Part shown: piece after piece, positions 11,022-51,400 of the stretch
How the letters are laid out: every line of letters starts with the position of its first letter
Numbering within the stretch: position 1 is the stretch's first letter
Assembly (NCBI GenBank): GCA_023213395.1
Contig: CM041465.1
Location: 192,269,741 to 192,333,740 of the forward strand
Reading direction: 5' to 3'
Origin: Cycas panzhihuaensis
Lineage: Eukaryota; Plantae; Cycadophyta
DNA: 64,000 nucleotides
Program-made: the position numbers and the translations under genes
The notes under the pieces: model-generated
Database searches by the model: none
The model's input: only the letters and a program-made list of their open reading frames with translations
Told to the model about the DNA's origin: nothing

Positions 11022-11529
11022 TTTGGTACTAGAGCAAGAGGAGACTAGCTCCCTCTGTTCTGGTTTGCAGCTGCTCAAGGAGATTTGGAGAAAGCCTACA
11101 AATACTTGGTGATGACATTCGCACTCTGAAGGCGATTCAAGATTTGTTTGAAGACTTTTTTTTGCAGGTTCAAGCATTTGGAGCTATTTTTTTTAAGACT
11201 GGAGCTGGGGTATGTTCTAATCTTTTTTTTTCACAAAGGTCTTATTGGGTGCAGCACAAATTATTGTCACAAGCAGTGATTTTTTTTGGAAAATATTATT
11301 CCATTAAATTTCTTTACAACCCAGATTTGAGAAAAAAAAATAATAATAAGAGTCAATTTTTATTTTCAGTCATTATAATTGCAGATATAGCTGTTAAGAT
11401 CTAGATTTCTGTTGTTCTAAACTCACCTTCTGGTTGCTCAGAATTAAGATCCACTCTCTACAGTGGGAAATCTTCTAAGTTTATTGTTGGCTATCCTCTT
11501 TTGTTTACTGAACAGTGCTTAGATTACAT

Positions 11530-11875
11530 GGGCTTGACAAACTTAATAGAATATAATTTTGCCTTAACCATTAAAATGCGAGCTTGATCTCGTCTTTCAT
11601 ACAATGAAGACAAAGTGTCCCAAGCTTCCTTAGAAGTTTTAGCACAAGCAATATTCTAATCTACATGCACATCAACAATCATGTGAAGGAATGCCAAAGC
11701 AATTTCATCTTTGGCTTCCCAAGCAGCAAGTAAAGCATCATCAGGTTCCACAGTAACATCGCCATTGATAACAGGTGATGGTCGAGGTAATCTCCCAGAA
11801 ACATAACTCCAAAATTTGTTCATGATTAGTAAGTTCTGAGTGAGTCTCTTCCATTCTTGATAATTATCTTATCCT
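11530..11875 (-). pseudogene. gag: Copia gag N-terminus (DUF4219/UBN2-like), inverted relative to the element
   Basis: Minus strand reads DKNNYQEWKRLTQNLLIMNKFWSYVSG..LAAWEAKDEIALAFL..AKTSKEAWDTLSSLYERRDQARIL. Confidence 0.85.
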
Positions 11876-11879
11876 GTTA

Positions 11880-14870
11880 ACCGAATGGTGCAAACATTTA
11901 GCATGTTTATGGCAGCCATATTTCGGTTTATAAAAGCTTGAAGCTAGCAGATAACCTGGAAACTCAAAGCTTTCGTCGCTTAAGTTCCACCTTCTAACGA
12001 AACCAACAGTCATGATCTTACTAGAAGATCCAATAACTGAATGGAATGATGAGGAGCTATGAGGATCAATGCCTCTACAAGTTGGATGCAAATAATATAA
12101 CACTTAATTCTGCTTACTCTGGTTCCATTGTCACTCCTTACTTGTCCAAGATGCAACTTTGGCATCAACGTCTACGCCACTTGAGCTTAGACAATTTGAG
12201 ACAGATGATCAACAAGAACATGGTACATGGGCTTCCTAAGATTTATGGAACGAAATGTTTTTGCGAAATGTGCATTATGGAAACTCAGCATCGCTTGCCT
12301 TTCCCTAAAGGCAAAGCATGGCGTACATCACATCCTCTACAGCTAGTACATTCGAATTTGTGTGGACCTATGTCCACATATCTTTTGGAGGAGCTTTGTA
12401 TTACATCTCCTTCATTGATGACTTTTCTCACAAAGTCTGGGTCTATTTCATCAAACACAAATCTGAAGTATTTTCCAAGTTCAAAGAATTCAAACTTGAA
12501 ATGGAGAATGAGTCTGGTCATTCAATCAAAACATAAGGATAGACAATGGAGGTGAATTTACATCAAATGAATTCACCCAATACTACAAGGATAACGACAT
12601 TCGGAGACAACTGATTATACCTCACACTCCTCAACAAAATGGAGCCTCTGAACAAATGAACAGAACTTTGGCTAATAAAGCCAAAGCTATGATGCATGCA
12701 CAAGGACTCACTCGAGCTTACTGTGCAAAAGCATTTCACACAGTTGCCTATGTGGCCAATCGCAGTCCTACTACAATAGTCACCAACATGACACCCGAGG
12801 AGGCATGGTCTGGCAAAAAGCCTACTGTCAGCCATTTGATGACTTTTGGGTGCATTGCTTATATGCACATTCCCGATCAGCAAAGAAAGAAATTAAACAA
12901 GCATAGTCTGAAATGCATCTTTGTAGGATATGCCATTCACAACAAAGCCTACAAGTTGTATGATCCTATAGGGAAGAAAATGCATCTCTCAAGAGATGTC
13001 ATCTTTGCTGAAGAAGATCACAAGGAAGTGCAAACAGCATCCATGCAACCTCCCATTGACAAAGGCAAGAAGATTGTTGATGCCTCCTTCCCTCTCAATC
13101 ATCTACACCATGTTCATCATCTACACCAGCTAGACTATCTACTTCAACTGAACTTGTTCCACTTGATCCAAGTACATCTTCTATTGACCAACCACTTACA
13201 CCAGAAGATTTTGAGGTTCAAGCAACTTCAATTCAAAAGTTACCCAAATGATACACACAAACAGTTCAGGACGGTCACATCATTGAAGGAAAACGTCCAT
13301 CTAAATATCGACACCAACTAATTATGCACTGATGGCTGAAGTACTTTGTGTTGATAAGCCTTCCACTTTTGATGAGGCTTCTAAAAATGAAAATTGGAAG
13401 GCTGCCATGGATGAAGAAATCCATTTTATTGAAAAGAATGGTACTTGGAATTTGGTTGAATTACCTAAACACAAACATGCAATCAATTGCAAATGGGTCT
13501 ACAAGACCAAATTCCATTCTGATGGTTCACTTAAAAGGCAAAAGGCTCGCCTTGTAGCAAAAGGATTTAAACAAAAAGAATGCATAGACTATGAGGAAAC
13601 TTTTGCATCAGTGGCGAACATGAACACTATCAGACTCATCTTGGCCTTAGCTGCTCAATGCAAATGGCCTATTTATCAAATGGACGTGAAGAGCACCTTT
13701 CTCAATGGCGATCTTCAGGAGGAGGTGTATTTGGAGCAACCTCTCAGATACAAAGTACAAGGCAAGGAGCATTTTGTATATCGCCTAAAAAAAACATTAT
13801 ATGGCTTGAAGCAAGCTCCAAGGGCATAGTACTCAAAGATCGATAACTACTTCTTGAGACATGGGTTTCATCAATCTACTTCAGATCCTAATCTGTATAT
13901 TAAACATGAAAAGAACCATGTAATTTTTATTGCCTTGTATGTTGATGACTTAGTGATAACTGGTAGTGACACTAAGATGATTCATATTCTTCAAAATGAC
14001 TTAAGGAGACATTTTGAAATGACAGATCTTGGACTTCTCTATTATTTTTTAGGCTTTGAGATATGACAACAGCCAGGCTATATCTTCATCTCCTAAGTGA
14101 AATATTCTTGGGACATTTTGTAGCGGTTCAGGATGCACGACTGCAAATTAGTGTCTACACCTATGGAGAATGGATCCAAGCTTACTCTCAATGAGGAAGC
14201 TGCACCGGCAGATCCCACACTTTACCGGCAGTTGATTGGGAGTCTCATTTATCTCATCAACACTCGACCAGACATTTCATTTGCTGTTGAGATTTGCTCA
14301 CGTTACATGTCTCAGCCCAATCAGATACACTTGAATGCAGCCAAACGCATACTTAAGTACATCAAAGACACCTTGCAGCATGGCCTTGAGTATGCACATA
14401 ATGAGAACTTCACCGAAGGGTTCTCGATTCGATCAAGGTTGCCAAGATAGCAGTAGATCAACATCGGGATACTGTTTTTCCCGTGGTTCAGCAGTTGTTT
14501 CGTGGAGTTGCAAGAAGCAACTCAATGTTACATTGTCCTCCACCGCAGTAGTACAAAGTCGCAATCGCCGCACTGTGAGATTATCCGCCACGATTGATTA
14601 TTGGGGAACTTGACTTGGCAGGGTCACCCCACCAGTGATACATCATGACAATCAAAGTGTGCTCAAGTTAGCTAAAAATCCATTTTCATGCCAGACAAAA
14701 CACAATCAAGTTCATCATCAATTCATCGAGAGCATGTGCGGAATGGTGAGATCAACCTCCAAAGATGCACTCACAGAGGAGGAGATAGCAGAGATCTTTA
14801 CCAAGCCTCTTGGTAGAGAAAAGTTTGTAAAATTCAGAGATGGTCTTGGTGTCCGACTTAACATTATAAA
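11880..14870 (+). pseudogene. pol: Copia B pol (GAG-pre-integrase, integrase, RT, RNase H), frameshifted
   Basis: ORFs 12046-14889: [64 protein letters not shown]. Confidence 0.95.
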
Positions 14871-14883
14871 CAGTAAGGGGCGG

Positions 14884-15436
14884 TGTTAAACCTTATGTTT
14901 ACATGTTAAGATATTGTACTTTAATTTTCATGTAATATGTGTACTTTTTACGTTAGGGACGACTTATCACTTAAGTGATAAAATGCACACCCATATTTTT
15001 TCTAGTGACACAACGTTGTCACTAAAGGGTCAAATGGACCCTCATGCATTTTTGCTCACATGAAAGCCCAAAAGGACACATGTCCAACATGCAAGGCATG
15101 TATCTTGGATGTTTGACACTTGTCAAACATCCAAGGTCTTAGGTCTCTCATTTCACTCTATATAATAAAACATCTTCTCATTGTCTCATAAGAGAGTTAG
15201 AACTATATTGTTATGCTGTCAGTTTGCTAATCAAATTGTTCATTCTTTGGAGATTAGACCAATTCTAATTCCACATATTGGGTATCATTTTCTCTTCCTT
15301 CTTCATTTGTGCTTTGTCTCTTTGCTCTCTATTTTCCTTGAAATTATTATACTTGTTTGTATTTGTGCAACTAGAACTAGAGTGATCATAGTTTCTAGAT
15401 CTTTGAACTGTTGAGGCCATCTAGCCTCTTTTCACA
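14884..15436 (+). repeat. 3' LTR of Copia B
   Basis: Follows PPT; direct repeat of 10470-11021. Confidence 0.95.
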
Positions 15437-15889
15437 ATTACCCTCCCCATTTAGAGGCTATTACAAATGTTATAAACATTTTGTATTGTATGTTTAATAT
15501 TTATTTAACATGATAAAGAATTTAATTTTATAATAAAGATTACAAACAACAATTTAATTAAAAGTGGAGATAAGCCAAGTAAAAAGTTCTTAATCAATAT
15601 CCATTTAAGAAGGTCATCTAATATTTATTTAACGTGATAAAAAATTTAATCTTGTGACAACGATTACAAACAACTTCTTAATTAAAAGTGAGGATGAACC
15701 AAGTAAATGGTTCTTAATTAATAGCCATTTAATAAGGTGGTCTCCTTTTGTTATTTCTTTTGTTAAAATAAATACTTCTATTAATAAAAATTATTACACA
15801 CTATCATAAGGATCCTAAACTAGCTCATTTATATTTAATTATTATTTAGTAATTTGTAGAAGATAGCTCCGTGAAGTCACCTATCTTGT

Positions 15890-20040: not shown

Positions 20041-20050
20041 TTGCAGACCT

Positions 20051-26245: not shown

Positions 26246-29200
26246 TATTAAAATATGTGATCATACCACCTAATGTAAAGTAGGCCTCCTATTTTTATGC
26301 CTAATTATGTGGAGGAATAGTCTCGATTGTGGTGACGTAATGGATGTATTTGTAACTATGTTTGGCACTTTAAATCTATAAATATAGATCAAAGTCTATC
26401 TTTGTAACATATCATTTTGTCATAATGTGATTATTATTCATTTGTGGGTTTTCACCCATAAGCGTTTCCCATGGCAATATGGTATCCCGTGTGATCTGCT
26501 TCAGTTTGTTATCTGCCTGATGTGAAAGATCCTGTCGACCTTGTTTGTTTCAGTTGCATTTTCTAATATGGTATCAGAGCATGTAGGTCATGCACATGTA
26601 GATGAACATTGTCGGAGGCCCAATCGATGGTACCAGGTCATGCTGGTTTGCCCTTAGCAGATTGGCGTGCCCGATGACCCTGTAGGACAACCACAGTAGT
26701 TCAGGTGATCGATGAGGATCCCAAGAGCCTTCTATCCATTGTTTGCAAGTATTCTGAGCTACATGGAGGTGTGTGGACGAGCATTGACTCTGTTGCCAGC
26801 CATGAGAGTGTTGTTTGAGCCTACTGAAGGTACTGGATCCCTATTTGACGTTGCCACTGAGTTTGCATGCCGTAGAGTTAATTGCCAGCCCCTTGTTGCC
26901 GGTGGGAGAGTGTAGAAACCCTAGCAGGCCTGTTGCAAATCCATGAAGTCATAATACGATCAATAAAAGAGAGGTATGCTTTGTATATTTATTACCCACT
27001 TGAATTTAGGGTTTGAATAATATATTTGACCTCGTTGGTTGGAATATATTCGGCCGCAAATGTTTGACTTGCCTGCATAATAATACTTGAGTCAATATAT
27101 TTGTTCTCTGATATATCGGTACCGCCCTCTATTGTTGTATTTGCATATACCCTATGTATATGTTATCAATTGCCCCATAGAGAGTAATACTATAGTCGTA
27201 GATGATGTATTTATGTCATCCAGTCTGTATTATTTTTTGAGTCGCCCTTGATGTAGTCATTAGTTTGCGTATAAACTTAGCAGCCGTGATATATATATAT
27301 ATATATACTATGCCGCTGCTGTTACGTGTTGTGTTGGTAGTTTGCTTTGTCTGCGTTGAAAACTGCCATAATGTTTTGCATCCGTTGTCAATAATATATT
27401 CTCGCCTAGTGATACACATATGTGTAGTCATTGACTAATGAATATTTATTGTGTTTCTGCCTGGTTGTATTGTGAATACAAAGTCGTGCTGTGTATTCTT
27501 TGTAGCCGTAGATCTCATTTAATACTCATCGTCAGTTAATGAGACGCCAATCACTCGTGATGTTTGGAGATATGCAACCGTGATATCTATTTACAGCCTG
27601 CATAGTAATTATGTTTGCGCCCGATGATATATCTCTGTCTGCGTGTTTAATATTGGCAGAGTCGGCTGCCTAATTTCTAGCTATGAATTCATGCAGTCAA
27701 TATATGTGTTTGGGCCGCCTTTTGACGATTAATAAAGTCGCCTGTTCATATTAATTGTTCAAATTATTATAGTCGCCTTTGTATGCATCGGGCAGTCGGC
27801 ATGATATTTGCAGATTGCGTGATGGTCGCGTGATGAAGGTCGCTATTTGTTGATTGCCATTGCCATTATTGCTTTGTTTGCCCGTCTGTCTCTGATCGTT
27901 TCATTCGTAGCCATCCATTGTCTTATTAATCATTTACGATTAATATTTGAAACCGCCGTGATACGTGTGATCGATCACCCAGTTCATATTAATTCGTCTT
28001 TGATTTATTCATTTCATGGCGTTAAATATATTTAAACGTATCGTTATTGGATATGGCGTTTGATATATCTCTTTTATTAAAATCGCTCGATTTTATATTC
28101 TTCGCCTTGTATTATTATATTGAACTTGGCATTGATATATTTTTGATATAAATCAAATACATATTGATATGTCTTAAATCGATATCGCTGTGTCATTTGA
28201 TTAAAGTCATTTACCTTATTATCAAGTGGGTAAAGTATGGTATGGTTTTATTTTCAATGACATTAATGTGGCGATATTTAGAGGTGAAACAAGCATTCTT
28301 TTAGGCACTTTGTTGGTGTCTGCTTGGTGACTGTTTGAGGGTCTCTTGCATACAATTGTATGGAAGAGTAAGTTGAGTGAAGAGGCGCCTATTGGGTCCC
28401 TTGCATGAAAGAATTGTTATGGCGATAATATGGGTGACTTACATGAAGGGGCTTTATGGGCAGAAATGAGGGCATGCTGATGTGAGAGAGAGATAGGGCG
28501 ATATGAGGCAATGAGGTGCTTGTTGCATGTGTGCTACATAGCAAGTTAAGGGCAATAATGGGCGAGTTTGATGGGCAGGTTGAGAGCAGGTTTTAAGGGC
28601 GATAATGCGCATGTTTGGGCGAAGATGAACATGTTTGAGATACCTTAATTGCAACTTAATACAAACTCCGTTACTATTTGAGTGTGGCATAGATCATTGC
28701 ACAAAGTTCGTGTTTATATGTCATTATTCAGTGAAATATGTGTGGTTTATTCAATGATAAGAGTGCGGTTTATTCATGTATTCATTCAAGTTCAGCTAAA
28801 TCAGATGTGTATGAGGTGATGAAGTTCATAATTTGCTTGTATGATTGTCGTTTGTGATGGACTGTTATACATTGACTAGTTGGACTGGTAGCATGAGGTT
28901 TGTGGCCTGGTTAAATGCTGGTTCAACATGGATGCATATCTGAACAAGTCTGATGTGGAACCGAGACATAGTGTTTAATGAAATTAAAGCGTGAATGGAA
29001 AGGTCTAAGATGAGTTGCCTTAAAATCAGTGATGCCTTTGTCATGGTATGTACAGTTGGCCTATAAGGTTGCATTGCAGGTGGGTATCATAATGCAAATG
29101 GTGAGGTTGGTGCATGTTTTGGTTTGCCTCCCATTGTTTGATGGTAGAAGCTGTAGTAGACAGGTATGGGTACCCCTGTTGTGATTGTTCGTGGCATATT

Positions 29201-33237: not shown

Positions 33238-33843
33238 AGTGTATGATCAAAGAATATCCACTTCAACTTGAAAATCAAATCAACAAAAGAAGACTTAAAC
33301 ACGAATATCGCTCCAGCCTCTCCTCACAATCTATGAATGTTGCTGCCAAGACAACCATCATGATGGGCAGTGCTCTCCTTCCACATTTTGTGTATACCGT
33401 AAGCAAACTAACCGACCAAAGATTGGAGTTTCCTATCAAGATTACTCTTCCAAATGGGTTTATCACACCAACGTGTTACAAATCAGAAGAAATGACCTCC
33501 TCCCGCAATGCCTTTATCCGTAATACTTAGATCACCATAGATCGTGAGCACGATATCTCTTTTCAATGATGATACTAAGAGTGTCAGCTACCAACTCGCT
33601 TCAGGATCAACTCTGCCTTCAAAACAAAAGTCACTGCAGTCGATTCACTTACAGTAATGGTGTCTTCAGTTGACAGATTCCTGCTTCAACTCTGTGTCCT
33701 GAACAGATTTAGAAAAAAAGCTTAAGGGTTCGATGACAGCCTCATACACTTCAATGCCCTTCAGATCTTGATAATAATCGGCAAATGCACAGTAAGCGCT
33801 AATAACGTCCACAGTATGCAAAGCATCAACAGCAAAAGTGCAG

Positions 33844-33905
33844 CTCTATCTTCATGAGTACTGCCTGCCAGATCGTGGTTCAACATCGCTCGTCAGATCG
33901 CTAGT
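33844..33905 (+). pseudogene. Captured receptor-like kinase snippets
   Basis: LYLHEYC / QIVVQHR and FNIARQIAS resemble RLK R.NIA.GIA.GL.YLHE.C...IVHR. Confidence 0.5.
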
Positions 33906-34109
33906 ATCTTGTCCTTATTTCAGCCAGCTGTCAAAACTGTCAGGACTGTTATGGAACAGTTATGGTCCAAAGAGGCAGTCGAGTAAGTCATGTGAGAACC
34001 TTTGATGATATACCAAATAAAGATGTCTTCTCAACACAAACCACCATAAATTGATATAACAGAGCTATGCAATAAATAACCGTCATGAAAATCAGTTTCT
34101 CTCATGCCC

Positions 34110-34330
34110 AGGTTTGCAGTGGAATTTGATTCTGCAATGAACAAGGAAATTAATGATTTGAATGGAAACCATGTGGGTATTGATATAGAGAGCCTAAAAG
34201 AGCACAGATGTATCTGAGATAGATCTAATCTTGAATGATGGAACCTAGTTGCCTGCTTGGATAGATAATGATGCCAGAACGAAAAATCTGGAGGGCATGC
34301 CACTCCTCTGATTTCTCACTTTATTGATCC
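34110..34330 (+). pseudogene. Captured legume (L-type) lectin domain fragment, LecRK-like
   Basis: FAVEFDSAMNKEINDLNGNHVGIDIESL, then DLILNDG..AWIDND and TPLISHFID. Confidence 0.88.
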
Positions 34331-34807
34331 GCTTTGGATTGTGGAATCAAACCTGGTGCCTGCAGTTATTTCCTTGATGACATGGATCTTAGGAGAAAGT
34401 GGATATAACCTGTGGCCTCACTCCTCTGGTGCGTACTCAGATCGCTAGCTGCTATTAACATACAACATCTTCCTTCATGGGGTGGTAAATCCAGACAAAT
34501 ATTGAGTCATAGGAAGCATTTACCTGATCGCAGCAGTGGTGACTTTGTGTTTGGCAATGATATTACAGTGCTTTTCTCCTTTCTCAAATCCTCTTCGATT
34601 TACTACACAACAGATATCTTTGGTGATCTTTGTCACTTAATATCTGCCATTATTTGGAGTAGATAACTGCGGTGAGACAGTTATTGTCTTCTCATGGAGT
34701 TTGAGGAAGGCATGGCAACGGTTGCTACAATCTTCTTTTCCACCGTAGGATAGTAATCCCTCGATCTTCAAGAAAATGACGGCTAACTGGCTCAGAACTC
34801 TTACAGG

Positions 34808-35335
34808 AAAGCCTATGAGGACTGGAGATTCTTTCAAGTCGTCAACCATGACCTCCCCATCCACCTCCTATGCAACCTGGAATCCGCCGCTAACAATTTC
34901 GTCACGCCTCAAGAGAAGTGAAAAGTCAGGAGAGATGCAGAAACTCTGTTGGGCTACTATGACTCTGAGCTTACCAAGAACAACAGAGATTGGAAGGAGG
35001 TCTTCGCTTTTATAACTAGAGACAACATGCAATTGCCAGTATGGGCAAGCACAAGGACGGGTGCGCCTTAATGGTTCTCTACCAAGACGACGTCAGAGGT
35101 TTGGAGGTGCGGCGTAAGAACGACAAGTGGTGTTGGGGTGAAACGAGAGTGTTGAGCACAGGGTGGTGGTTACTGGCAAGAGACGGAGATTGTCTGTTCT
35201 GTTCTTCTTCAATCCTTCTCACTATGTGATGGTAAAGCCTATGGAAGAACTTCTGAATGACAAGAGCCCTGCAAAGTACAGGGAATACAACTGGGGAAAG
35301 TTCTACAAGAAGCGCAAAAATACCAATATCAAGAA
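34808..35335 (+). pseudogene. Captured, internally deleted 2-oxoglutarate/Fe(II) dioxygenase (DOXC class) fragment
   Basis: KAYEDWRFFQVVNHDLP..KVRRDAETLLGYYDSELTKNNRDWKEVF; GKHKDGCALMVLYQDDVRGLEV (HxD); SVEHRVVV..RLSVLFFFNPSHYVMVKPMEELLNDKSPAKYREYNWGKF. Confidence 0.92.
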
Positions 35336-36167
35336 TTTGGAGGATTCTTCATGTACACAGGGCGCTCTTGCAATTTGGGCATCACTCACATGTAGGGAGC
35401 CTTTTCCCCATGTTACTACTGTCTTTCTTACTACGGGTGCTTCATATTAATACAGCTAAAACCTTTATTGATGACAGCCTCCCTTTTGCCTTATATCATC
35501 GAGTTACTTTTTGCATTTTAGGCTTATAACAGAGTAAACCCTATATAACAGATTTTCTCCAACAATGCTAGGTCTGAGAAACAAGAAAAAGGAATAAGTT
35601 TACCAGGTAAAATTCTTGATTTGTATCAACAGTGGCCTTGAGACTTATCTTTCAATTCGATCTCCAATCTAGCGATGACTTGACGGTCCCACCTCTTGTT
35701 TAAAATTTTCTCCTCTCTCAATCTCTTTCCAACTCGAATCTTCAATCTGGCAGCTGACCCAACACTTCAATGTCCTCAACACACAACCTGCTCTGATACC
35801 ATGTTAAGATTTTAACATGGAGAACGCTCATCAACAGCAAAATCAATAACATCAACAGAGATTAACACAACATAATCAGAATGTATTACCATACCAAAAG
35901 CACCAAAGACTCAATACGAGCCTTGATGATGTGATGTCTTTACATACTACCTCAACCACCTTTATATACCAAAGAGGTGGGAGACTATTCAACACAAGTA
36001 ATGCATGTGGGACAAATACCTTTGTCCTGACCAATAGCATTACACCACTAACTTGACCAATAAACTTATATCCTTTTACATAGTATTATAATGACCTTTT
36101 GACCCTAAGACTTAGGACTATCACTTATTATCCTAGGACCCACACACATTAAACATTATTTCTAACA

Positions 36168-37835
36168 TACTCCTCAAGAAGAAGAAGTCTCTCCAAAAGA
36201 ATCAAGGACTAAAGAAGGCAAAAAGGAAAAGAGGGTTCCCAAATGGTACCTCAAAACTATAGAGGAAGGAAAAAGTGAAATCCTTCCTCACGGAACAAGA
36301 AGGCAAAAACCAAAAGCCCTGTTCAGTCAAGTAGAACCAAAATCATTCATTGAAGCAAAGGAACATTCCGAATGGAGAAAAGCCATGGACATTGAGCTAA
36401 AGCCCATAACCAAGAATCAGACGTGGGCAAAATCATTTGTAAATTACAAATGGGTTTACAAAATCAAAAGGGGGCTCGAAGGGAAAATAGAAAAATACAA
36501 AGCTAGGCTAGTTGCAAAAGGTTACACCCAAACAGTAGGTGTAGATTATGAAGAAACATTCTCTTTAGTGGCCAAACTGAACACAGTTAGAATAGTTTTA
36601 GCTCTGGCAGCATATAAAAATTGGAACATATACCAGTTGGATGTAAAAAGTGCATTCTTAAATGGCTAATTAGAAAAGGAGGCTACATGTCTCAACTTGA
36701 GGGATATGTCAAAGAAGGGCAAGAGCACCTTGTCTACTAGTTGAAAAAGGCTCTATATTGACTGAAACAAGCTTCTCGTGCATGGTATGCTAAACTGGAT
36801 AATCATCTCTACTACAATGGCTTCCAAAGGAGCAATGCAGACTCGAGCCTATATATAAAAAATAGGAATGGTGCAATCACCATAATGGTGATATATGTTG
36901 ATGACATGATTCTTACTAGTGATGATGAAGAATCAATATCAGATATAAAGTGTTAACTGGAAGGCAAATTTGAGATGACAGACTTGGGGCTCCTCAACTA
37001 CTATCTAGGAATCCAAGTTGATCAGCAAAATGATTCAATTTCTCTCTGCCAAAGTAAATACATAAAAGACTTGTTAGCTAAATTTCGTACGGAAGAATGC
37101 AATCCTTGCTCTAGACTGATAGAGGTGAAGCGCAACTTGATTCCAGATGAAAAGGAACCATGTGTAAATGCAACTCTGTACAGGCAACTCATTGGTAGCC
37201 TCATCTACCTCACAGCAACCAGATCAAACACCTCATATGATGTAGATCTAATTTCAAGATACATACATGACCCAAAAATAAAACATTGGAACGCTGCAAA
37301 AAGGGTCTCAAGGTATCTAAAAGGCACAACAGAGTTCAAACTGGTATTTCCAAAAGGAAAAACTCTTCAGTTAACAGAGTTTTGTGATTCGGACTAGGCA
37401 GGTGACAAAGAACAAAGGAAGTCAACCAGCGGATATTGCTTCTTCCTAGGATCTTCACCAATATCCTGGAGCAGCAAAAAACAAGCCAATGTAGCATTAT
37501 CATCCACAGAAGTTGAGTACAAATCAACTGTCAGTGCAACCATCAAGCAAAGATGACTCGCATAACTTTTGAATGATTTGATGAAGCCTCAAAAGGAAGC
37601 AACCATACTTCACTGCAACAATCGGAATACCATCAAACTCACAAAGAATCCTGTATTTCATTCCTGAACCAAACACATAGAGGTTCAACATCACTTCATT
37701 ACAGAAAAGGTCCAAAACAAAGAAGTGGATCTTGTCTATTGTCCTACAAACGAACAAGTGGTAGACATATTAACCAAACCACTTGGAAAAGACCAATTCC
37801 AAATACTTAGAGATAAAATAGGTGTAATAGGATGA
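36168..37835 (+). pseudogene. pol: Copia C RT-RNase H remnant
   Basis: [61 protein letters not shown]. Confidence 0.92.
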
Positions 37836-38075
37836 AACATTAAGAGAGGGTGTTAGAATGTAATGTTTTATCTTATGTCATAGACATTCAATGTATGTAA
37901 CCAACAGACATGTGTCCTTTAGATGTATTTTGGTTACAAGTCGGTTACAAACCCTAATTGTATTTATTCACTTGAGCTCTCAATGATAATCATCAAGCAT
38001 TCTTCATCTGTCTTTTGTCTAGCATTCTGACAACATCGTGGGAAATGGCCACCTCCAAACTGTATTATTCAAACT

Positions 38076-41000
38076 TGTTAGAGTGGTATTTTATCCACTT
38101 AACCTGACTAATGTTTCTGTGGTGTATATGTGTGAATATATGTGATGTAATAATGTAATTATGTGGGCCGACAGATGTAATACATGAGGCACTTATGGAT
38201 CTATTTAAACGAATGCAAAGTCCATTGTACTTTACACTTTTGTATCAATGTAATCTATATTTTCTGTGGTGGGTTTTTATCGCAAGGTTTCCCACATAAA
38301 TTCTGCATTGTCTGCTTGTTCATTTCATGCTTGTTATGTACATAAATGATCTATTTGTCTATGGTTTCTAACACGGTGTCAAAGCAAATGGTCATGCACA
38401 AGTAGGCACATGTTGGGCAGAGTGTTCAAACCGTAGGTTGCTAGGTTGTGCTGGCTCAACCCTTCGTTGAGAATCGACTTCTCTGACAATCAAAAGAACA
38501 ACCACAATTTGCAATGATTGAGTAGGAACTCTCGGTGCCTTCTGTTATCTATTATTATATGTTACATAGACTCTATTGTAGCAGAGAGACTACAGACGAA
38601 GGTGGTGTAGACATAGCAAAGGTGCCAATTGTGGAAAGTATTGTCTATTGAGCCCAACATTCTTCTCAGTGCATGTGGATTGAAGAGTCGTAACCCGCGT
38701 AGCTGAGAAGGAGATATTTCTATCAATGCAGAGTTGTGGGGTTGTTTGACACCAATGAAGGTGAAGCAGTCGTCGAAAGCTTCGAAGCTACTCATTATTG
38801 CACTGTCCCTAGTTGTTGAAATTGCCCGTCGTTGTTCGTATCCATACAGACTACTAGGCGTCAAAGATTATTCGTAGGTTGTGTCGTTGTTTGTAACTGT
38901 AGTCACCAATTGTATCCTTACAGAGTTGCAAGCAGCCATTGAATGCTAGTTTACGGAGCTGATCGAGGATGCATTAAGGGGGAGAAGCAGTAGACTCTAG
39001 CCATGGAGAAGTTTTCAAACAAAGCCCTGTTATGATAACAAAGACACTAGACGTAGTGGCAGCCGCAGACGCTAGTATATCATAGATGCAATTCGCCATT
39101 ATGTGTTTGCAGTAGCCCTTACGAAGTCACCATTATATTTACAATTTTTTCAAAGGTATATTTAACAATGTTTCACCCTTTCTCTTAAAGTCGAAATAAA
39201 TATATTTTTATTCGCCTTTGAAATCAATCAAATGAGTGATGGCGTATTTCAAAATACCTCATTATATATATTTCGTAAGGCGTTTATTGCGTGAATGTAT
39301 GACATTTGGTTGAGGCGCCTTTGTGATATTTGGAAATGGGAATTCGCTGTATGAATTTGTGAGAAAAGAATATTGTTTTGTGTCTTTGAAGCAATATTCT
39401 TTGCTATATTGAGATGATCATTGTGTGCTTTATTTTATTAAGGTGGCTTCGATTATATATCATTATTTTTTTCAATGAAAGCACATTTTTAATATGAGGC
39501 GTATATGATCCTTGCAGTATGCATGAGTAGTCTCGATAGACAAATGTTTTGATCATTGCAACATTACATTGATTTCAGAGTGGTGTACTTTTTTATGAGA
39601 TATATAGCAATACCTTATTAAAATCAGAGTTGTGAAGAATTCAAAAAGTTCTTTCTTTGAGCAGTCATTTGGCCTATTTGTAAGTGGTCATTAGTCTTGG
39701 TGAAGCCTTTATATTCTGGGTTGTTGAACAGACTACTTTTTTGAGGAATTTAACTTGTCGGAGGTTGGTTTAGGGTTTTTATATTTGTTGGTTGTACATC
39801 ATGGAGAAGTTAGTTCCTCTAGTCACTTTTAATGGGAATAACTTTAACGAATGGAAGGCAAATATGGAACCAGTCCTCATGGTTAACCAACTTTGGAGCA
39901 TTAGCAAATCTAAAACATTGGTTGTTCCCTTAGATGAGAAAGAATGTATACATGCCGAAGAAAAATAGTTCATGGTTGTGGGTTTGCTTAAGTTGTCATT
40001 GGCTCCAAACTAGAGAGCTTTAGTCTCCAACCTTAAACTCCTCATGAGATTTAGATTAAGTTACGTGAGACATTTGAAAAGAAGAAAACTAACCATTGTG
40101 TTACTCTTATGATGGAATTGTTAAATTAAAAGGTAGAGGATGAGAACAACATTAGTGCATACCTGAATAAGATCACTAATTTGAGGAATAGGTTGGATGA
40201 ACTAAAGTCAAACTCAATTGATGATGCACTGCTCTTTGCTATTATCGTGTCTAAGTTGCTAGCTACATTTGGATCCTTCCAAACTATTTATGCTAGGGAT
40301 GAAGTTATGGAGGGTGAATCGTTTGAGTCATTGCAAAACTTGATTCTAACAAAGGACACCAAGTTGAAACATTATGGAATGCTTGATGGCTCAAGTTCAA
40401 ATCGGGGTTTGGTCATGGAGACACAAAGAAACGATGTTGTTCAGAGAGTAAGTCTACACAAAAAACAGGCGAGACATCTCAAAAAAAGTAGTAGTTTATG
40501 GGTAAATGCAATTACTACAAGAAAGAGAGCCATAAAGAAATGAATTGTTGGTTTAAGAAGCAAGATAAGCGCAAGGCTAACCAAGATGACAAGGGGAAGA
40601 GTTTAGCAGTGCATTGTGTTAGGATATCAATGTTCTAAGCTAAGTCAAATAAAAAAGACTATTGGATCCTAGATTCTGGTGCATAGAAACATATCACCTT
40701 TCAAAAGCAGAACATTGATGCCTTGAATGTAGGTACAAGCAATGCTAATGTGATTCTTAGAGATGCTCATGCATTGCCTGCAGAAGGTGTTGGTCTCGTT
40801 TCACTTGCAGGAGGTAAGTTCAATGGAGTTTACTATGTGTCAAAGATTAAGCTTAATCTTCTTTCTACCCGAAAAATCTACAAGCAAGGTATGAAAATTG
40901 AGCTTTACAATAATAAATGCATAGTTAAGGATCCTAAGAAGAACTTCTGTATTGTTGCTACTAGAAGAGTGCAAGATAATTTTTGGGTGTTTGAGAAATT

Positions 41001-44000
41001 TAGAGCCCAATAGGATTCTTATGCTTTTGTTGCTAGCATTGATGATATGAGTACATTATAGCATGAGCATTTGGATCACCTTAACTATAGGCACATCAGT
41101 CTTACGAATAGGTTGAAGATGGTGGTAGGTTTACCACAAGTTCCATGTTCAGAAGGCATTTGTGAAGGATGTGTGTATGGAAAGAACCATCGTTATCCGT
41201 TTTCTAGGGATAGTGCTTGGAGAGCAAAGGAGAAGTTGGAACTTGCATATACTAAGTTGATGGGTCCACTATCAAATCCTTCTATTTCTACTGCTCGATT
41301 CATCCTTATGTTTGTAGATGATTATAATAGAAAACTTTAGGTATTATTTTTGAATAACAAATCTGATGTGTTTGATCATTTTTGTGAATAGAAAGTTAGT
41401 GTTGAGAATGTGTGTGATAAGAAAATAAAGATTTTGAGGAGTGATAATGGAGAGGAGTATGACAATAATGCCTTCAATCAATTTTGCATTGATCATAGTA
41501 TTAAACGGGAATTAACCATCCTGTATACCCCACAGAAAAATGATGTTGCAAAGAGGAAGAATTGTACCATGATGGAGATGGCAAGGTGTATGGTGTATGC
41601 AAAGAATCCACCTCCTATGTTTTGGGAAAAAGATGTTGCAACAATTGTTTATTTCTGAATAGGGTATCTATGAAAGTTGTTTGTGGCATTACCCCTGAAA
41701 ATTGTTGGACCGGTTAGAAACCTTCCATTAATTATTTTAAGGTATTTGGGTGCATTGCATATGCACACATCCCAGATGCATATCGAAAGAAGTTGGATCG
41801 TAAGAGTTTGAAGTGTGTTTTTGTGGGATACTCACTAGAGAATAAGCTTTATAGACTTTGAGATCCACAAGGAAAGAAGCTTTTAGTTATTTAGCATGTT
41901 AAATTTGATGAGTCAATGATGTACCATGCTAAAAGGTCATCTAAAGATAGATTTTATCCTCCACTTCCTCTTTTTTCGAGCCGTGTTTCAATAGGTATAT
42001 AGATTCAAGAGCCTAACATCATGTCAGAAATGGAAATAGAACCAAGTGGGAGTAATGATGAGGAACCGCCACAAGTCGAGGCATGAACAACACCCCATGT
42101 TCCATTATGGGCTAGGAGGATTACTGAGGAATCCGGTGTGACGATGGAAGATCTTGAAGATGGACAAAGAATAAGAAATCAACATACCAGTTAAACTTTG
42201 GTTGTAGACACCAACGATTCCAACAATCGTATTTCGTATGAAAAAGCGAAAGAAGATCTGCGATGGAGGAGGAGTATAGTTCGATCATGAAGAATAATAC
42301 ATGGGATTTGGTTTCCTTACCTCCATCCAAGAACCTGATCGATTGCAGGTGGGTCTATAAGACGAAGTTTCGTTCCAATGGAGAGGTAGACAAGTATAAG
42401 GCTAGACTTGTTGTGCAGGGTTTCAAACAGAAAGAAGGAATCGATTAGGAGGAGACATTTACACTAGTCTCCAAGATATCAACGATCTAATTGATCCTTG
42501 CTTTAGTAGCTACATATGGTTGGAAGTTACATCAAATGGATGTGAAGTCAACATTTATTAACGGAGACTTGAAATAGGAGATCTATATGGCTTAACCTCT
42601 TGGTTTCGTGAAGGAAGGACAAGAGCATTTGGTGTGCCGCTTGAAGAAATCTTTCTATGGCCTAAAACAAGCACAATGTGCTTGGTATGATAAGATAGAT
42701 ACTAAATTGAAGGAGGATGATTTTGTAACAACATAATTAGAGCGGGTCTTTATATTTGAAAAAATGGAACTATAATAGTTGTTATTGTATTGTATGTTGA
42801 TAACTTTCTTGTTATAAGCAATTGTATTAAGACTATTGCAACTACAAAGCCCTATTTGGGACATACTTTTGATATGATAAATCTCGGGCAGCTTCATTAC
42901 TTCTTGCACATTGAGATTAGGTAGATGGATGATCATATCATGATGTCACAATCAAGGTATGCTAAAAACTTGTTTGAGAGATTTACGATGAAGGATTGCA
43001 AACCAATGAAGACATCACGTGTAAAGGGCATAAAGCTTCTGAAGGACATGAAAAAGCCAACTGTAGATAGGACTTTATATCGACAATTGGTAGGGAGTTT
43101 GATTTACTTAACTCATATTAGGATTGATATTGTTTATGTTGTTGAATTGGTATCTTGTTACATGCAAGGTCCCCAAGAACCTCATTGGGTTGCTACAAAG
43201 GGGATTCTGAAGTATGTTAAGGGAACACTTAATCTTGGCCTTGAATACCATCGTGGTGGAGAAGCAAGCTTGCATGGGTATAATGATGCAAATTGGGGTG
43301 GAGATGTAGAAGATAGGAAATCAACTGTAGGATTTTTTTTGATATTGACAATGGGTTTGTATCATAGCAATCCAAAAAGCAAACCACCGTTGCATTGTCT
43401 TCTATAGAGACTAAGTACTAAGGACTAAGTGTAGGTGCAAGGGAAGTTGTGTGGTTGCAAGGACTTTTGGAGACTCTTGGAACATCTTTTAACACACTGG
43501 TTATACATATTAATAATCAGAGTGATATTCTACTTTCAAAGAATTCAGAATTTTACACATATACGAAGCACATCGAGATTTAGCACCATCACATATGTAA
43601 GTAGATTAGATCAAGGAAGTTGTAGGTTGAAGTTTGTCCAAGTGAAGAACAACTTACAGATATATTTGCCAAAGCTCTTATTGAAGGCCACTTCATCAAG
43701 ATTTATGTAAATTTGGGACTTAGTGAAGTTATCCTTGAGGGAGGATATATCAACAAGGATAAAGACAAAGAATAGTTCAACCCCTAGGAAGACTTCAAAA
43801 TCCCATTTTTATATTAAGGGGGGATGTTAGAGTGGTATTTTATCTACTTAACCTGACTAATATTTATATGGTGTATATGTGCAAATATTTGTGATGTAAT
43901 AATGTAATTGTGTAAGTCGACATATGTAATATGTGAGACACTTACGAATCTATTTAAATGGACACAAAGTCCATTGTACTTTACACATTTGTATCAATGT

Positions 44001-44122
44001 AATCTATATTTTCTGTAGTGGATTTTTACCACAAAGTTTCTCACATCAATTTTGCATTGTGTGCTTGTTCATTTCGTACTTGTTGTGTACATAAATGATT
44101 TGTTTGTCTGTGGTTTCTAACA
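38076..44122 (+). mobile_element. Ty1/Copia LTR retrotransposon D, full length, degenerate, with a long 5' leader
   Basis: 298-bp LTRs 38076-38373 and 43825-44122; decayed PBS CGGTGTCAAAGC 38374-38385; PPT AAGGGGGGA; TSD AAACT/AAACC. Confidence 0.95.
39801..43730 (+). pseudogene. Copia D gag-pol, disrupted
   Basis: FNGNNFNEWK, WILDSGA, CEGCVYGK, LRSDNGEEY, CRWVYKTK..KYKARLV, YRQLVGSLIYL. Confidence 0.92.
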
Positions 44123-44305
44123 AAACCATACATATTTAAACTACAATACACCACCTAGTTGTCCAATCACATCCTAAGAGCCACTAGGTCAACCAATGAC
44201 CAACATTATGAAGAAGTGTGTGCACTATGACTCCCTTGTTCACATTAAAGGGTTAACTCATTAATTTACGTTAATATTAAATTCATAGGTTATCATTACC
44301 CAACA

Positions 44306-46655: not shown

Positions 46656-46893
46656 ACACAATTGCGAGTATCACGGTTGAAGGCCAACATAATTCTACTA
46701 GAAGCCTAGGCATCCCTTCAACAACCTCAACTACATGTTGGACACAAGTTAAAGGTTAATGGGTTGATTACACATCCTACATTTGAGTTTCAAGTTGTGT
46801 AGACTCAATGATGTCAGCTTCCACATTGGTCTACAATCTTGTATATTAATCACTTACTTATTTGTAAAAAGTGATCCATAGTGTAATCACAAT

Positions 46894-47085
46894 CATAGTG
46901 CTTCTCATATTTTTGCTACGTCAGGTTAATATTTGCCACAAGTGTTAGTAGCCAATTTTCATCATAGTGCTTCTCATATTCTTGTTGCGTCAGGTTAATA
47001 TTTGCCACAAGTGTTGGTGGCCAATTTTCACCATAGTGCTTCTCATATTCCTGTTGCATCAGGTTAATATTTGTCACAAGTGTTG
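46894..47085 (-). repeat. 69-bp tandem repeat (~2.8 copies), in frame on the minus strand
   Basis: Units start at 46894, 46963 and 47032; encode TLVANINLTQQEYEKHYDENWPP-like 23-aa repeats, with one TAG. Confidence 0.9.
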
Positions 47086-47834: not shown

Positions 47835-48190
47835 TAAGGGGGAGATTGAAATGAGTTAATGTCACAAGGTCATTACATTAGTTGATTATTCCTAAAAGGA
47901 TCTTAAGTGAACTTTAAATTAGATCACTTAAGAGAAATGCACTTTCATGTGCATTATGTGTAATTTCATTTCACCTAACTCTAATGCTTCATCTCTCAAT
48001 ATAAAAGTAAAAGCTCAATGGAGGAGGCTCATTCTTACCTCCCCATTTTGTGAGAGCTACTCTTTTTCTCTCAAGTTTTTCTTGCTCCTATGTTTGCCTT
48101 TGTATTTAGTACAGGGAGTGAAGGATAGATCCATTCCTTTCATTTTTCTCAAAGTCAACCTTGAGAAAGAGATTGTTCATCTATAGTTTA
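47835..48190 (+). repeat. PPT plus probable 3' LTR of another element
   Basis: TTAAGGGGGAGAT followed by TGAAATG; TATA-like AATATAAAA ~47998; LTR end uncertain. Confidence 0.55.
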
Positions 48191-48492
48191 GACCCAATCC
48201 ATTCTTTCCCATGTCATTATCAAGTTATCTAAGATGTGTCTTACCTTTAGAAGGCCAATATGCTCCTGCTTGACTACTCTTGTTGTTAGGGAGTTCATAT
48301 TTTTAGCAAGTGCTTTGGCCAAAATTTTGTAAGAGATGTCAAGTAAGGTAATCAGCCTATGACCACTTATCCTATCTTTATTACTTATCCTATCCTTATT
48401 AACCCTCTGGGGATAAGTTTTGGCCTTCCTTGCTTGCTTCTTCTACCTAAAGGCTTAGATTGTAAAGCCTCATATGGCAAAATAGGAAAAAT

Positions 48493-51400
48493 TATTGGAA
48501 ATTAGGATGCACACATTCAAAAGAATTGTTGAGAAAAAACTCAAACTTCACATCATTATTCAATAATATGAATATGTACATCACTTTAACATATAACTCA
48601 CATGTGAGACATAACTAGCATACCTAACCCACTTAACTAGTGTACCTAACCCACTGTTTAATTAGGAGCTATAACACTAATTAATGCTCCTTATGACCTT
48701 TTAAATTAATTCAACATTATCTTCCAACATCCCTCCATAATATTTAATTTCATTACATCAAATGATTGGTATAGCTCCACTCATTGGAGAAAATTACCTT
48801 TGTACTTCTAATGCATCATCAATCAATCTATGTTAATCAAACTAGTTTAGGTGTGCTTCCATCTGCACTTCATTCTTGAGATTGCTACCAATGTCCATAT
48901 AAAGGTGTTACCATCTATTTGAACACACAGATAACCCACCTCTGTATCCACCAATCTACTAGGAAATCCCTTCACGTACACAATCCATCAACATCTATGA
49001 AGATCTTCTTCTATGCTACTTATCAACACTTCTACATCCACACTTCACTAACGTACATCATGGGAGTAGGGCGAACTACCTAACTAGCTAGATATCAGAA
49101 AGCTTAACATTCAGAAATAAGCTAAACTCCTTGCCTAGACAATGTTCAAGCAACCTTATGGACAACTTAAGCAAAGCACTAGAACAATTGTTGCTACATT
49201 TAGGTAGGATTTTAGACAAATTTGTTGTTGACCCCATGTATGGTTTCACAATGGAAACTCAAAAGCAGCAAGGTCACATAATAGCACACAACCATCCTTC
49301 ATCTTGAAGTTTTTACAAAGAAAAACATCTCAAACAGAATGACAATTGCCACAACCTCAATTACAATTCTTGCGATGCTATAAATATGGGGGTTACAAAA
49401 TTTCTATAAGTTACATGCCAATTGGTAGTTGTGAAAACAAATAACCTCCTGCTTCACTATCTCTGCCTTCATTCTAGTTTGTCTTCAACCAGTCTATAGT
49501 CAAACTTGTAATATAGTCTCCTAAATGACAAAATAAGATAATCTATTAGCCAAACATACAATTAACTACTACTAATTAAGGAGATAACTAAGCTTCTTCA
49601 CACACCACCTATTAAAGCTTTGGTTCTTCAACAAAGGTAGACACAACAAATAAACTCCTCCATCAATCGAACTCTTTCAAAAGCCATCCATTAGAAATTA
49701 ACATCCTTTTCTCAAATGTTGATTATTAAAATACCATGTGTAGAGTAGCACCTTTTTCCAATTGTTGCACTACTTATTCCACAATTGAATGGTGATGATC
49801 TTCATAGCCTGGGCTTTTGTCTTAGCACTTAATTTTTCTCCAGTTTCCTCCAAGTTTGTTGTGGTGGATTCCTTCACTACTAGCAAACTTATAGTTGTAA
49901 TCATTTTTTGCCTCTTCACTTGTTTCAACTTGTATGCAAATCAACGGACTCCACTTGTTTGCTTTGAAGGCCTAGCTTTTGTTTGTTTTTTATGTTACTA
50001 CTTCTTTTCATGTTTTCAATTCTTTTGATTTGTTTTTCAATTTAGGGTTTTGCCCTTTGTCTTACATTCTTATGTTTTGATTTCTTCTTTAATTCAGCTG
50101 AAAGCTTGAAATCCAATTACACCTACCCACTAATCTCACATATGCCATGTTATAGGCCAAAGACTTGGAGGAATTCTATTTATCAATCTATCAAGATTGA
50201 ACTACATGAACTTACTCTAAGAGCAAATTGTTTCAAAGGACTAATCCCTAAATTAAAGATTTTCCAAATTAGTGCATAAAAGGGTGTTGACACCTCATTG
50301 ATCCCAATTCTTTGTAATCAGCTTTAGTCACATATAGAGATTCAAACTCAGGTTCAAAAGCCCAAGACTATCTTCCTCTCCACACACCTAGCATTGGACC
50401 TTTTTGTGTCATCATTTTACTTTCATATTCATCACAAACAAGAGGCCTGAGCTCCTGTGCCAATCTTGCTTTCATGCCTTAAAAAAGAGCATTTTTGCTA
50501 ATCAAAACTATGCTTGAATAGGGAACTAGGTAAAGATGAGTAGTGCAAGAATTGGCTACCCTTACAGTACACTCGACTAATCCTGCCTAGTGCATTCCAA
50601 GATCCGCTAGGTGAAAAAGCATCTTTGGGATAAGAAACCATTCATTAGTCAATTTGAGTTCTTCATTTTTGTGGTCCTTTCATGAAGACTCTATAGCCCA
50701 AGCAAACCAAATGACTGGCATCTTCATCTTGCCCCTCACTAAAACCCAAGAAGCTGACAATGCCATTACTCAAGGATTATCCTAAAATGGATTTCTTCTT
50801 TTTCACTTATCCAATAGACTGATAAACTATGGCATTGCCATCTGTGAGAGGCCAAGATGAATTCTTTGATACTTCCCCTACCCATTGTGATACTATATAC
50901 GATGTCCCTGTAAAACTTACACTAAGAGAATTCTTGTTGTGCTTAGTTTCTTGGTGGTTGAATCTACCATTTGGATGAAAAGATTCGCAAAGAGGTTAAG
51001 ATTAAGAGGCTAAGCCACAATTGCCATTTGAATCAAGTGCTTAGCCATGTCCAAGGTTTGTTATGCCATTATTGAGCTTCTAACACTTATGTGAGCGCTC
51101 TTATTATCTAGGAATACCATTAATTGATATTTGCTTAGATCTATGCATGTTGCTACTCTAACACATCACTCTTCTTCCTTTTACAAAAGTTTTCTGCTAT
51201 CAAACAATAATGCCCTTTCTTGGGTGCTTGGGCACCCTTCAACTACATGCCATTAGAGATACTCTCCCTCAATAATGATTTGAGTATTTCATCCTCATAG
51301 GTGAACTACTCCTCTCATCACAATCCCAGATCGAAGAAGTAACATTTCAAGCATTGAGCATGGCAGCTTCTCAAACCCACTCTAATACCAAAATGTTAGA

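What the first reader, a model, noticed from the sequence alone, without database searches (positions are those of the whole stretch)
11036..51380. Recurrent antisense host-gene mosaics in the 5' leaders of several LTR families: candidate mobile small-RNA target/trigger cassettes
Seen: in six LTR elements (B, E, F, G, D, I; D and F share an LTR family) the region just downstream of the PBS is densely packed with short pieces that translate into host-protein motifs, mostly PLS-class PPR (SW/WN.MI, VTF..VLSAC, DVFVG, A.KVF..M, YG.HG) and plant LRR (DLS.N, N..SG.IP). They lie on the strand opposite to the element whichever way the element faces in the genome. Most pieces are ~15-30 nt; G also keeps 0.2-0.5-kb pieces. 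Established: PPR, LRR-RLK and LecRK are large families, PPR and LRR-containing genes are major sources/targets of 21-nt phased siRNAs, and TAS/TAS-like non-coding loci silence PPRs in trans. Inference: these elements capture host mRNA in antisense orientation and whittle it down into a spacer-like array that could make trans-acting siRNAs, pair with host mRNAs, or decoy host siRNAs. The fixed position and strand bias argue against random capture, but short motifs recognised by eye carry a real false-positive risk.
Basis: partly seen in the sequence, partly recalled or inferred. Interest (0 to 1): 0.92.

Follow-up and report, generated by a model that had tools for sequence, protein, structure and literature searches.

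The report
Antisense gene scraps: one element only
The claimed strings of tiny PPR and LRR gene snippets in six plant jumping genes do not hold up. One of the six does carry backwards pieces of two other host genes, a known kind of gene capture with an unusual polarity.

Summary
The window is a nest of Ty1/copia LTR retrotransposons.

**PPR/LRR claim: not reproduced.**
- Counts match the sense strand and dinucleotide shuffles.
- 210 antisense stop-free pieces gave no PPR or plant-LRR Pfam hit.
The 101-codon one also hit nothing among 1.84 billion proteins.

**What is real, in two of six elements.**
On its antisense strand lie an internally deleted 2OG-dioxygenase fragment (34806-35340) and an L-type lectin fragment (34112-34294).
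- Transcriptome-type runs hold long contigs about 90-93% identical to just these blocks.
- Element B carries a copia gag N-terminus backwards (11527-11868).

**Reading.** This looks like passive capture by reverse-transcriptase template switching, carried along with the element. Small-RNA function is untested and nothing here supports it.

Gene-fragment capture by LTR elements is known and very common in gymnosperms. The antisense, leader-located form was not described in the papers I searched. This scan has already noted antisense captures behind copia primer sites in other windows of this genome.

The parts
35802..36167 (-).
   Evidence: 98.6% identical to 31467-31830 and has TG..CA ends. 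Very high depth in DNA runs.
35790..35801 (-).
   Evidence: Exact match. Five variant joints in DNA runs have one side at 35785-35790 (tables 5 and 5c).
33250..35789 (-).
   Evidence: The gag start (DUF4219) lies at 32953-33246(-). Antisense open-frame excess: 0 of 300 shuffles reach it.
34806..35340 (+). Antisense 2OG-Fe(II) dioxygenase fragment (JOX-like), in three collinear blocks 34806-35037, 35063-35122 and 35143-35340. The C-terminal end lies nearest the PBS.
   Evidence: Pfam DIOX_N 22-54 and 68-99, 2OG-FeII_Oxy 21-51 and 77-101. PDB 6lsv, E = 9e-7. Contigs of 720 and 540 nt in runs X20/X17 match these blocks at about 89-93% and then run on as unlike sequence.
34112..34294 (+). Antisense L-type (legume) lectin domain fragment
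   Evidence: Pfam Lectin_legB, E = 1.9e-8, model positions 118-146. PDB lectins, E = 0.007. Contigs of 1.7 kb in X20/X17 match only this block.
33689..33763 (.). 75-nt block matching a third expressed host RNA; its strand is undetermined
   Evidence: Loose ends of 190-255 letters lie on both sides in X20/X17. The only open frame lies on the minus strand, which is not significant.
   Evidence: Pfam DUF4219, E = 4e-4. No pol family in 31831-33250.
11024..11035 (+). PBS of element B
   Evidence: TGGTACTAGAGC, 2 mismatches. The LTR pair 10470-11021 / 14884-15436 is 93.9% identical.
11527..11868 (-). Copia gag N-terminal part lying backwards in B's leader, where B's own gag and protease should be
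   Evidence: Pfam Retrotran_gag_3 18-47, Retrotran_gag_2 2-48 and 56-93 on the minus strand. B's integrase and RT are on the + strand from 12046. Only 29-38% aa identity to other gag genes in the window.
38565..38867 (-). No support for that.
   Evidence: 0 Pfam hits at E<=10. 0 hits in 1.84 billion proteins. No PPR chain in PDB. ORF length is within the shuffle range, P(max) = 0.12.
26583..26840 (-). No support for that.
   Evidence: 0 Pfam hits at E<=10. PDB best E = 0.78, an acyltransferase.
11037..11183 (-). Antisense frame in B's leader, called a 'PPR-like block' (contains QVFVG). No support for that.
   Evidence: 0 Pfam hits at E<=10. PDB best E = 1.8.

Best explanation
The 'PPR/LRR mosaics' are chance resemblances of 4-6 residues in AT-rich non-coding leaders. 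They are not a feature of the sequence.

Two elements do hold real backwards pieces:
1. Its long leader holds backwards fragments of a 2OG dioxygenase mRNA, an L-type lectin mRNA and at least one more host RNA.
2. Element B has a backwards piece of a copia gag in place of its own gag and protease.

Most likely mechanism (inferred, not shown). During reverse transcription inside the particle, the growing plus-strand DNA, or the minus strand copying a host first-strand cDNA, switched onto co-packaged foreign RNA near the primer-binding site. It copied that RNA from its 3' side towards its 5' side, jumped within it (which made the internal deletions), and returned to the element. This leaves the foreign sequence antisense, with its 3' part nearest the PBS.

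The chimeric leader then spread passively with the element, mobilised in trans. I see no evidence that it does anything.

Shown: anatomy, strand, identity of the pieces, their match to expressed host RNAs, and their presence in DNA runs of several organisms. Inferred: the copying mechanism and the absence of function.
For: **Chance motifs**
- motif counts equal the sense strand and the shuffles.
- no PPR or LRR family in 413 pieces.
- no homologues.

**Real pieces**
- Searches identify them.
- A control scan of the other 229 pieces of 55 aa or more in the window found only retrotransposon domains.

**Host origin**
- In runs X20/X17 the LTR and the 2OG block have similar depth. In DNA runs X1/X5 the LTR is about 1000 times deeper. 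So X20/X17 behave as transcriptomes.
- Their 540-1720-nt contigs match only the 60-232-nt blocks at about 89-93%.

**Polarity fits 3'-to-5' copying**
- The 2OG C-terminus lies nearest the PBS and DIOX_N lies farthest.
- In B the gag part nearest the PBS is the more C-terminal one.

**Capture is older than this copy**
- LTRs are 98.6% identical, against about 7-11% divergence of the pieces from host RNA.
- 20 runs from at least 12 coded organisms hold 0.2-0.4 of the leader's words.

**The PBS edge is where copies differ**
- Five variant joints have one side at 35785-35790, including one copy without the 2OG block.
Against: - Only three orientable pieces exist, so antisense bias cannot be shown here (P = 0.125).
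- The 2OG block starts about 450 nt from the PBS, not at it. The stretch between (35341-35789) is unidentified.
- The 75-nt block 33689-33763 may be sense-oriented.
- Protein-based tests cannot see captured UTR or other non-coding RNA, so the other four leaders could still hold host-derived sequence.
- The RNA status of X20/X17 is the tool's guess.
- No test here separates RT template switching from DNA-level insertion.
Confidence: 0.65

Rival explanations
1. One reading: the leaders are mobile cassettes of antisense host-gene snippets. These make trans-acting or phased siRNAs, pair with host mRNAs, or act as decoys for host siRNAs, and they are kept for that reason.
For:
- siRNA cross-talk between TE-captured fragments and their donor genes has been proposed for maize (bioRxiv 10.1101/777037) and gymnosperms (PMC13477047).
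- A 222-nt contig of the RNA-type run X20 spans the PBS-LTR junction at low depth.
Against: - No PPR or LRR content at all.
- Only 2 of 6 leaders hold recognisable pieces.
- No listed holder of the leader is on record as RNA.
- Rfam finds nothing.
- The pieces are frameshifted and about 7-11% diverged, as expected for neutral decay.
- No small-RNA data could be examined.
Confidence: 0.05
2. Insertion at the DNA level. Host or TE fragments entered the leaders as filler DNA during double-strand-break repair, or as small nested insertions. Orientation is then chance, or sense insertions were removed because they bring splice or poly(A) signals.
For: - The pieces are internal fragments without poly(A) tails or 3' ends. 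The host RNA runs on beyond 35340, and the lectin piece sits at positions 774-964 of a 1.7-kb contig.
- With three pieces, all-antisense is expected by chance 1 time in 8.
- One block may be sense-oriented.
Against: - Chains of unrelated fragments confined to the PBS-to-gag interval, with copy-to-copy breakpoints at the PBS edge, fit replication errors better than random breaks.
- Nothing comparable was found in pol, the LTRs or the inter-element DNA of this window.
- Other windows of this genome are reported to show the same polarity and position (unchecked here).
Confidence: 0.2
3. The other four leaders also hold antisense host RNA, but from UTRs or non-coding RNAs, or too decayed to recognise. 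The recurrence would then be real even though the PPR/LRR labels are wrong.
For: - About 2.6 kb (26567-29185) of it has no counterpart in D, a 'variable slot' directly behind a conserved PBS plus about 20 nt.
- Antisense open-frame totals are mildly high in B, F and D (P about 0.09-0.11).
Against: - No protein-level signal in any of them.
- The open-frame excess is not significant once strand composition is kept.
Confidence: 0.2

Closest known systems
Gene-fragment capture (transduction) by plant LTR retrotransposons. Examples: maize Bs1, the rice and sorghum surveys, and the roughly 400,000 captured fragments per gymnosperm genome (PMC13317346, PMC3726574, PMC13477047).
   Same: An LTR element with intact ends carries fragments of several unrelated host genes inside it. 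The chimera has been copied along with the element.
   Different: [quoted passage not shown] Here the identifiable pieces are antisense and lie in the PBS-to-gag leader. The reviews I searched mention neither orientation nor the PBS.
Abnormal template switching between co-packaged RNAs, as in Veju TRIM and BARE-2 (Sabot and Schulman, cited in PMC13317346)
   Same: Foreign sequence enters a retrotransposon during reverse transcription. The internal deletions of the 2OG piece resemble reverse-transcriptase jumps.
   Different: Classical minus-strand copy choice gives sense-oriented inserts. An antisense insert needs the plus strand to copy RNA, or the minus strand to copy a cDNA.
TR-GAG-type non-autonomous elements, which keep only gag (named from my own knowledge, not from a paper I read here)
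   Different: Its gag is frameshifted, and a 2.5-kb chimeric leader makes up most of the interior.
TAS and phasiRNA loci that silence PPR or NLR genes in trans
   Same: Only the idea of a non-coding transcript with complementarity to host mRNAs.
   Different: No PPR or NLR/LRR content, no known trigger site, no Rfam match and no small-RNA data.

Membership tests
PLS-class PPR-derived sequence | Match to PPR repeat, E or DYW profiles (Pfam PPR families) | tested here: not met
   0 PPR families in 210 antisense and 203 sense pieces of 20 aa or more at E<=0.1-1. 0 hits at E<=10 for the named ORFs.
   The strings are absent from the window except QVFVG. With one mismatch allowed, the five PPR strings give 3 antisense against 5 sense hits.
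PLS-class PPR-derived sequence | Nucleotide-level match of the snippets to host PPR genes | not testable with these tools
   No host CDS set is available.
Plant LRR (LRR-RLK/NLR)-derived sequence | Match to plant LRR profiles (LRR_1, LRR_8, LRRNT_2) | tested here: not met
   None found. The only related hit is LRRCT_2 at E = 0.026 in 120 searches, which is noise level. N..SG.IP occurs 0 times.
LTR-retrotransposon gene capture (Bs1 type) | Complete element: LTR pair, PBS, PPT and target-site duplication | tested here: met
B has LTRs 93.9% identical and flanks GTTAC/ATTAC.
LTR-retrotransposon gene capture (Bs1 type) | Internal piece homologous to a host gene that exists outside the element | tested here: met
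   Pfam and PDB hits to 2OG dioxygenase and lectin. Long contigs match only these blocks and continue as unlike sequence.
LTR-retrotransposon gene capture (Bs1 type) | Captured piece in the same sense as gag-pol (the usual case per PMC7264820) | tested here: not met
   2OG and lectin read on the + strand, whereas the element's PBS, gag and PPT are on the - strand.
LTR-retrotransposon gene capture (Bs1 type) | Chimera propagated with the element (more than one copy) | tested here: inconclusive
   Leader contigs appear in low-coverage DNA runs of several coded organisms. However, depth is not copy number, and the host genes themselves may contribute.
TAS / phasiRNA-producing locus | miRNA trigger site and 21-nt phased siRNAs | not testable with these tools
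   No sRNA library could be laid. Rfam finds no family in the window at gathering score.
Non-autonomous gag-only copia derivative (TR-GAG-like) | gag present, pol domains absent between the LTRs | tested here: met
   DUF4219 at 32953-33246(-). No RT, integrase or protease family in 31831-35801.

The most novel reading that the evidence does not exclude
Copia elements of this genome repeatedly pick up backwards copies of whatever RNA is packaged with them, host mRNAs and other retrotransposon RNAs alike. The captures fall in a slot just inside the primer-binding site, through a strand-specific error of plus-strand DNA synthesis. The resulting non-autonomous elements spread transcripts antisense to host genes, or (as in B) to the gag of an autonomous copia.
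Probability: 0.25. Interest if true: 0.7.

Novelty: new variant of a known kind. Interest (0 to 1): 0.33.

Why it matters
The headline claim would have been striking: mobile arrays of PPR/LRR snippets acting as small-RNA triggers in six LTR families. Motifs of 4-6 residues picked out by eye in AT-rich leaders are not evidence.

What survives is narrower. One clear case, and one TE-derived case, of antisense sequence capture in the PBS-to-gag leader add to a series this scan has reported elsewhere in this genome.

If a genome-wide count confirms the polarity and the position, it would point to a specific reverse-transcription error. It would also explain part of the very high gene-fragment load of giga-genomes.

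Tried and rejected
1. No PPR signal. Only the very loose DLS.N pattern is raised, and I did not follow it.
2. Pfam on all stop-free pieces of the six leaders, both strands. No PPR or LRR.
4. PDB searches at E<=10 with the three named ORFs. No PPR or LRR chain.
5. Rfam on the whole window. Nothing.
6. The apparent excess of open antisense frames in five of six leaders. Rejected as evidence of coding remnants, because strand composition explains it except in G.
7. Only about 20-35 nt are clearly shared; local alignment score 31 against a shuffle maximum of 28.
8. Inverted or direct repeats in B that would show a simple inversion of its own gag. None found.
9. Finding the strand of the 75-nt block from loose ends. 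Inconclusive.
10. Not done: the search for homologous proteins on fragments, because its length window excludes full-length relatives.
Full report
**What the window is.** A self-comparison and inspection of the repeat ends show a nest of Ty1/copia LTR retrotransposons. Each has TG..CA LTRs, a tRNA-iMet-type primer-binding site (PBS) and a polypurine tract. Pfam confirms copia gag, integrase and RT domains.

|---|---|---|
| B | 10470-15436 | + |
| F | 26246-30497 | + |
| G | 31467-36167 | - |
| D | 38076-44122 | + |
| I | 48488-51537 | - |
| E | most likely 23919-38032, the element that hosts F and G | + |

I took as 'leader' the stretch from the PBS to the first recognisable gag or pol homology. 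These are 11036-12040, 24115-24806, 26582-29184 (29750 in the first scans), 33250-35788, 38390-39773 and 48635-51375.

**Check of the PPR/LRR observation.**
WN.MI, VTF..VL, VLSAC, DVFVG, A.KVF, YG.HG and N..SG.IP have no match in any of the six frames of the whole window. The nearest things are QVFVG at 11094-11105(-) and DLSFN at 35642-35656(+).
- In the six leaders the summed counts are 1-2 on the antisense strand, 0-1 on the sense strand and 1.0-1.4 in dinucleotide-preserving shuffles.
- Allowing one mismatch, the five PPR strings give 3 antisense and 5 sense hits. Only 'DLS.N' reduced to three of four residues is raised (21 antisense, 11 sense, 10.4+-3.4 shuffled). That pattern carries almost no information, and this is one of seven tests.
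- I translated every stop-free piece of 20 residues or more in all frames of the leaders and scanned them against Pfam. The 210 antisense and 203 sense pieces gave no PPR family and no plant LRR family.
The 101-codon ORF has no relative at E<=0.001 among 1.84 billion protein representatives.

**What the scans did find.**
- On the antisense strand only, Pfam reported 2OG-FeII_Oxy (two pieces), DIOX_N, Lectin_legB (E = 1.9e-8) and copia gag families. The sense pieces gave nothing.
- The other 229 pieces of 55 aa or more in the window gave only retrotransposon domains.
The element's PBS, gag remnant (DUF4219, 32953-33246) and PPT are on the - strand.
- The dioxygenase is collinear: DIOX_N positions 22-54 and 68-99, then 2OG-FeII_Oxy 21-51 and 77-101. 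It is spread over three frames and compressed to about 535 nt, so it is internally deleted. Its C-terminal part matches the jasmonate-oxygenase-like At5g05600 protein (PDB 6lsv, E = 9e-7).
- The lectin piece matches the central strand region of legume-type lectins.
- Only in this leader does the antisense strand have more open frame than composition predicts (1358 residues against 997+-135; 0 of 300 shuffles). In the other five the apparent antisense openness is explained by strand composition.

**Nucleotide-level support.**
- Twenty public runs from at least twelve coded organisms hold 0.2-0.4 of the sampled words of this leader.
- I laid four runs on 32900-36167. In the two DNA runs the LTR is roughly a thousand times deeper than the 2OG region. 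In the two small runs that the tool guesses to be RNA, the LTR and the 2OG region are of similar depth, so these behave as transcriptomes.
- Those two runs hold contigs of 1.7 kb, 720 nt and 540 nt that match only 34112-34294, 34806-35037 and 35143-35340. They differ at about 7-11% of positions and continue on both sides as unrelated sequence. These are host mRNAs, not copies of the element.
- A fourth block, 33689-33763, behaves the same way. Its strand cannot be settled. The only open frame across the block plus the loose ends lies on the element's sense strand, but that is not significant.
- The element's LTRs differ by only 1.4%, so the capture long predates this insertion and has been carried along.
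- Variant joints in the DNA runs cluster at 35785-35790, the inner edge of the PBS. One contig joins 34596 directly to 35785, which is a copy without the dioxygenase block.

**Element B.** B's integrase and RT read on the + strand from 12046. Where its gag and protease should be, the minus strand encodes a copia gag N-terminus (Retrotran_gag_3 18-47, Retrotran_gag_2 2-48 and 56-93) at 11527-11868. It is only distantly related to the other gag genes in the window, and no repeat structure points to a simple inversion. This is an antisense capture too, but of retrotransposon RNA, not of a host gene.

**The other leaders.** About 2.6 kb of unrelated filler therefore sits directly behind a conserved PBS. 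Nothing I could run identifies that filler, nor the leaders of D, E and I. Protein-based tests cannot see captured UTRs, and the reads tool was capped at one call, so host origin of these stretches is neither shown nor excluded.

**Mechanism.**
- Shown: the position (PBS-to-gag leader), the strand, the host origin of the pieces, the internal deletions and an age older than this copy.
- Inferred: the pieces were copied by reverse transcriptase from RNAs packaged with the element. An antisense insert with its 3' part nearest the PBS is what results in two cases. Either the plus-strand DNA, having just copied the PBS, is extended on an RNA template and then returns to the element. Or the minus strand, on reaching the 5' end of its template, copies a host first-strand cDNA. 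Both pieces whose direction within the donor can be read, the 2OG fragment and B's gag, have this polarity.
- Jumps within the template would give the collinear, deleted 2OG fragment.
- Rival: insertion at the DNA level (filler DNA). With only three orientable pieces, all-antisense has a chance probability of 1 in 8, and I cannot exclude this rival.
- I see no evidence of function. There are no small-RNA data, no Rfam match and no listed holder on record as RNA.

**Comparison with what is known.**
- Capture of gene fragments by plant LTR retrotransposons is well established, for example maize Bs1 and the rice and sorghum surveys (PMC13317346, PMC3726574). It is reported to be massive in gymnosperms, about 400,000 fragments per genome, with a proposed epigenetic conflict between donor genes and captured pieces (PMC13477047; for maize, bioRxiv 10.1101/777037).
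- The reviews and surveys I searched mention neither antisense polarity nor the PBS, and two further full-text searches found no such description.
- So the real part of this finding is a variant of a known kind.
- Earlier notes of this scan report the same polarity and position in other windows of this genome. I did not check those. They served as leads for the mechanism only.

**Verdict.** The longer antisense pieces in one element are real, and B's backwards gag adds a second case. The PPR/LRR snippets are not real. Antisense capture and internal deletion are supported. Recurrence in six families and the PPR/LRR content are not. The small-RNA role is untested. Interest is modest.

Noticed in passing
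window 11527-11868 (-): Element B has a copia gag N-terminus lying backwards where its own gag and protease should be. A transcript of B would therefore be antisense to the gag of some autonomous copia family.
   Followed up: partly
   Followed up: no
window 33689-33763: A 75-nt block matches an expressed host RNA. Its only open frame, which ends in a stop codon, lies on the element's sense strand, so it may be an exception to the antisense rule.
   Followed up: partly
window 11036-11401 (+): A 122-codon stop-free frame lies directly behind B's PBS on the sense strand. It is longer than in 98.7% of shuffles and has no Pfam hit.
   Followed up: no
   Followed up: partly
window 22034-22197, 38040-38075 and 44123-44268: Two copies of another LTR family.
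   Followed up: no
window 1-43103 (the pieces of alignment A5, outside the six leaders): One piece matches Integrase_H2C2 (E = 1.2e-5). This is a gypsy-type integrase scrap among otherwise copia elements. I did not locate it more precisely.
   Followed up: no
window 46892-47084 and 15495-15738: Tandem repeats of 69 nt x 2.8 (92% matches) and 124 nt x 2 (84% matches).
   Followed up: no
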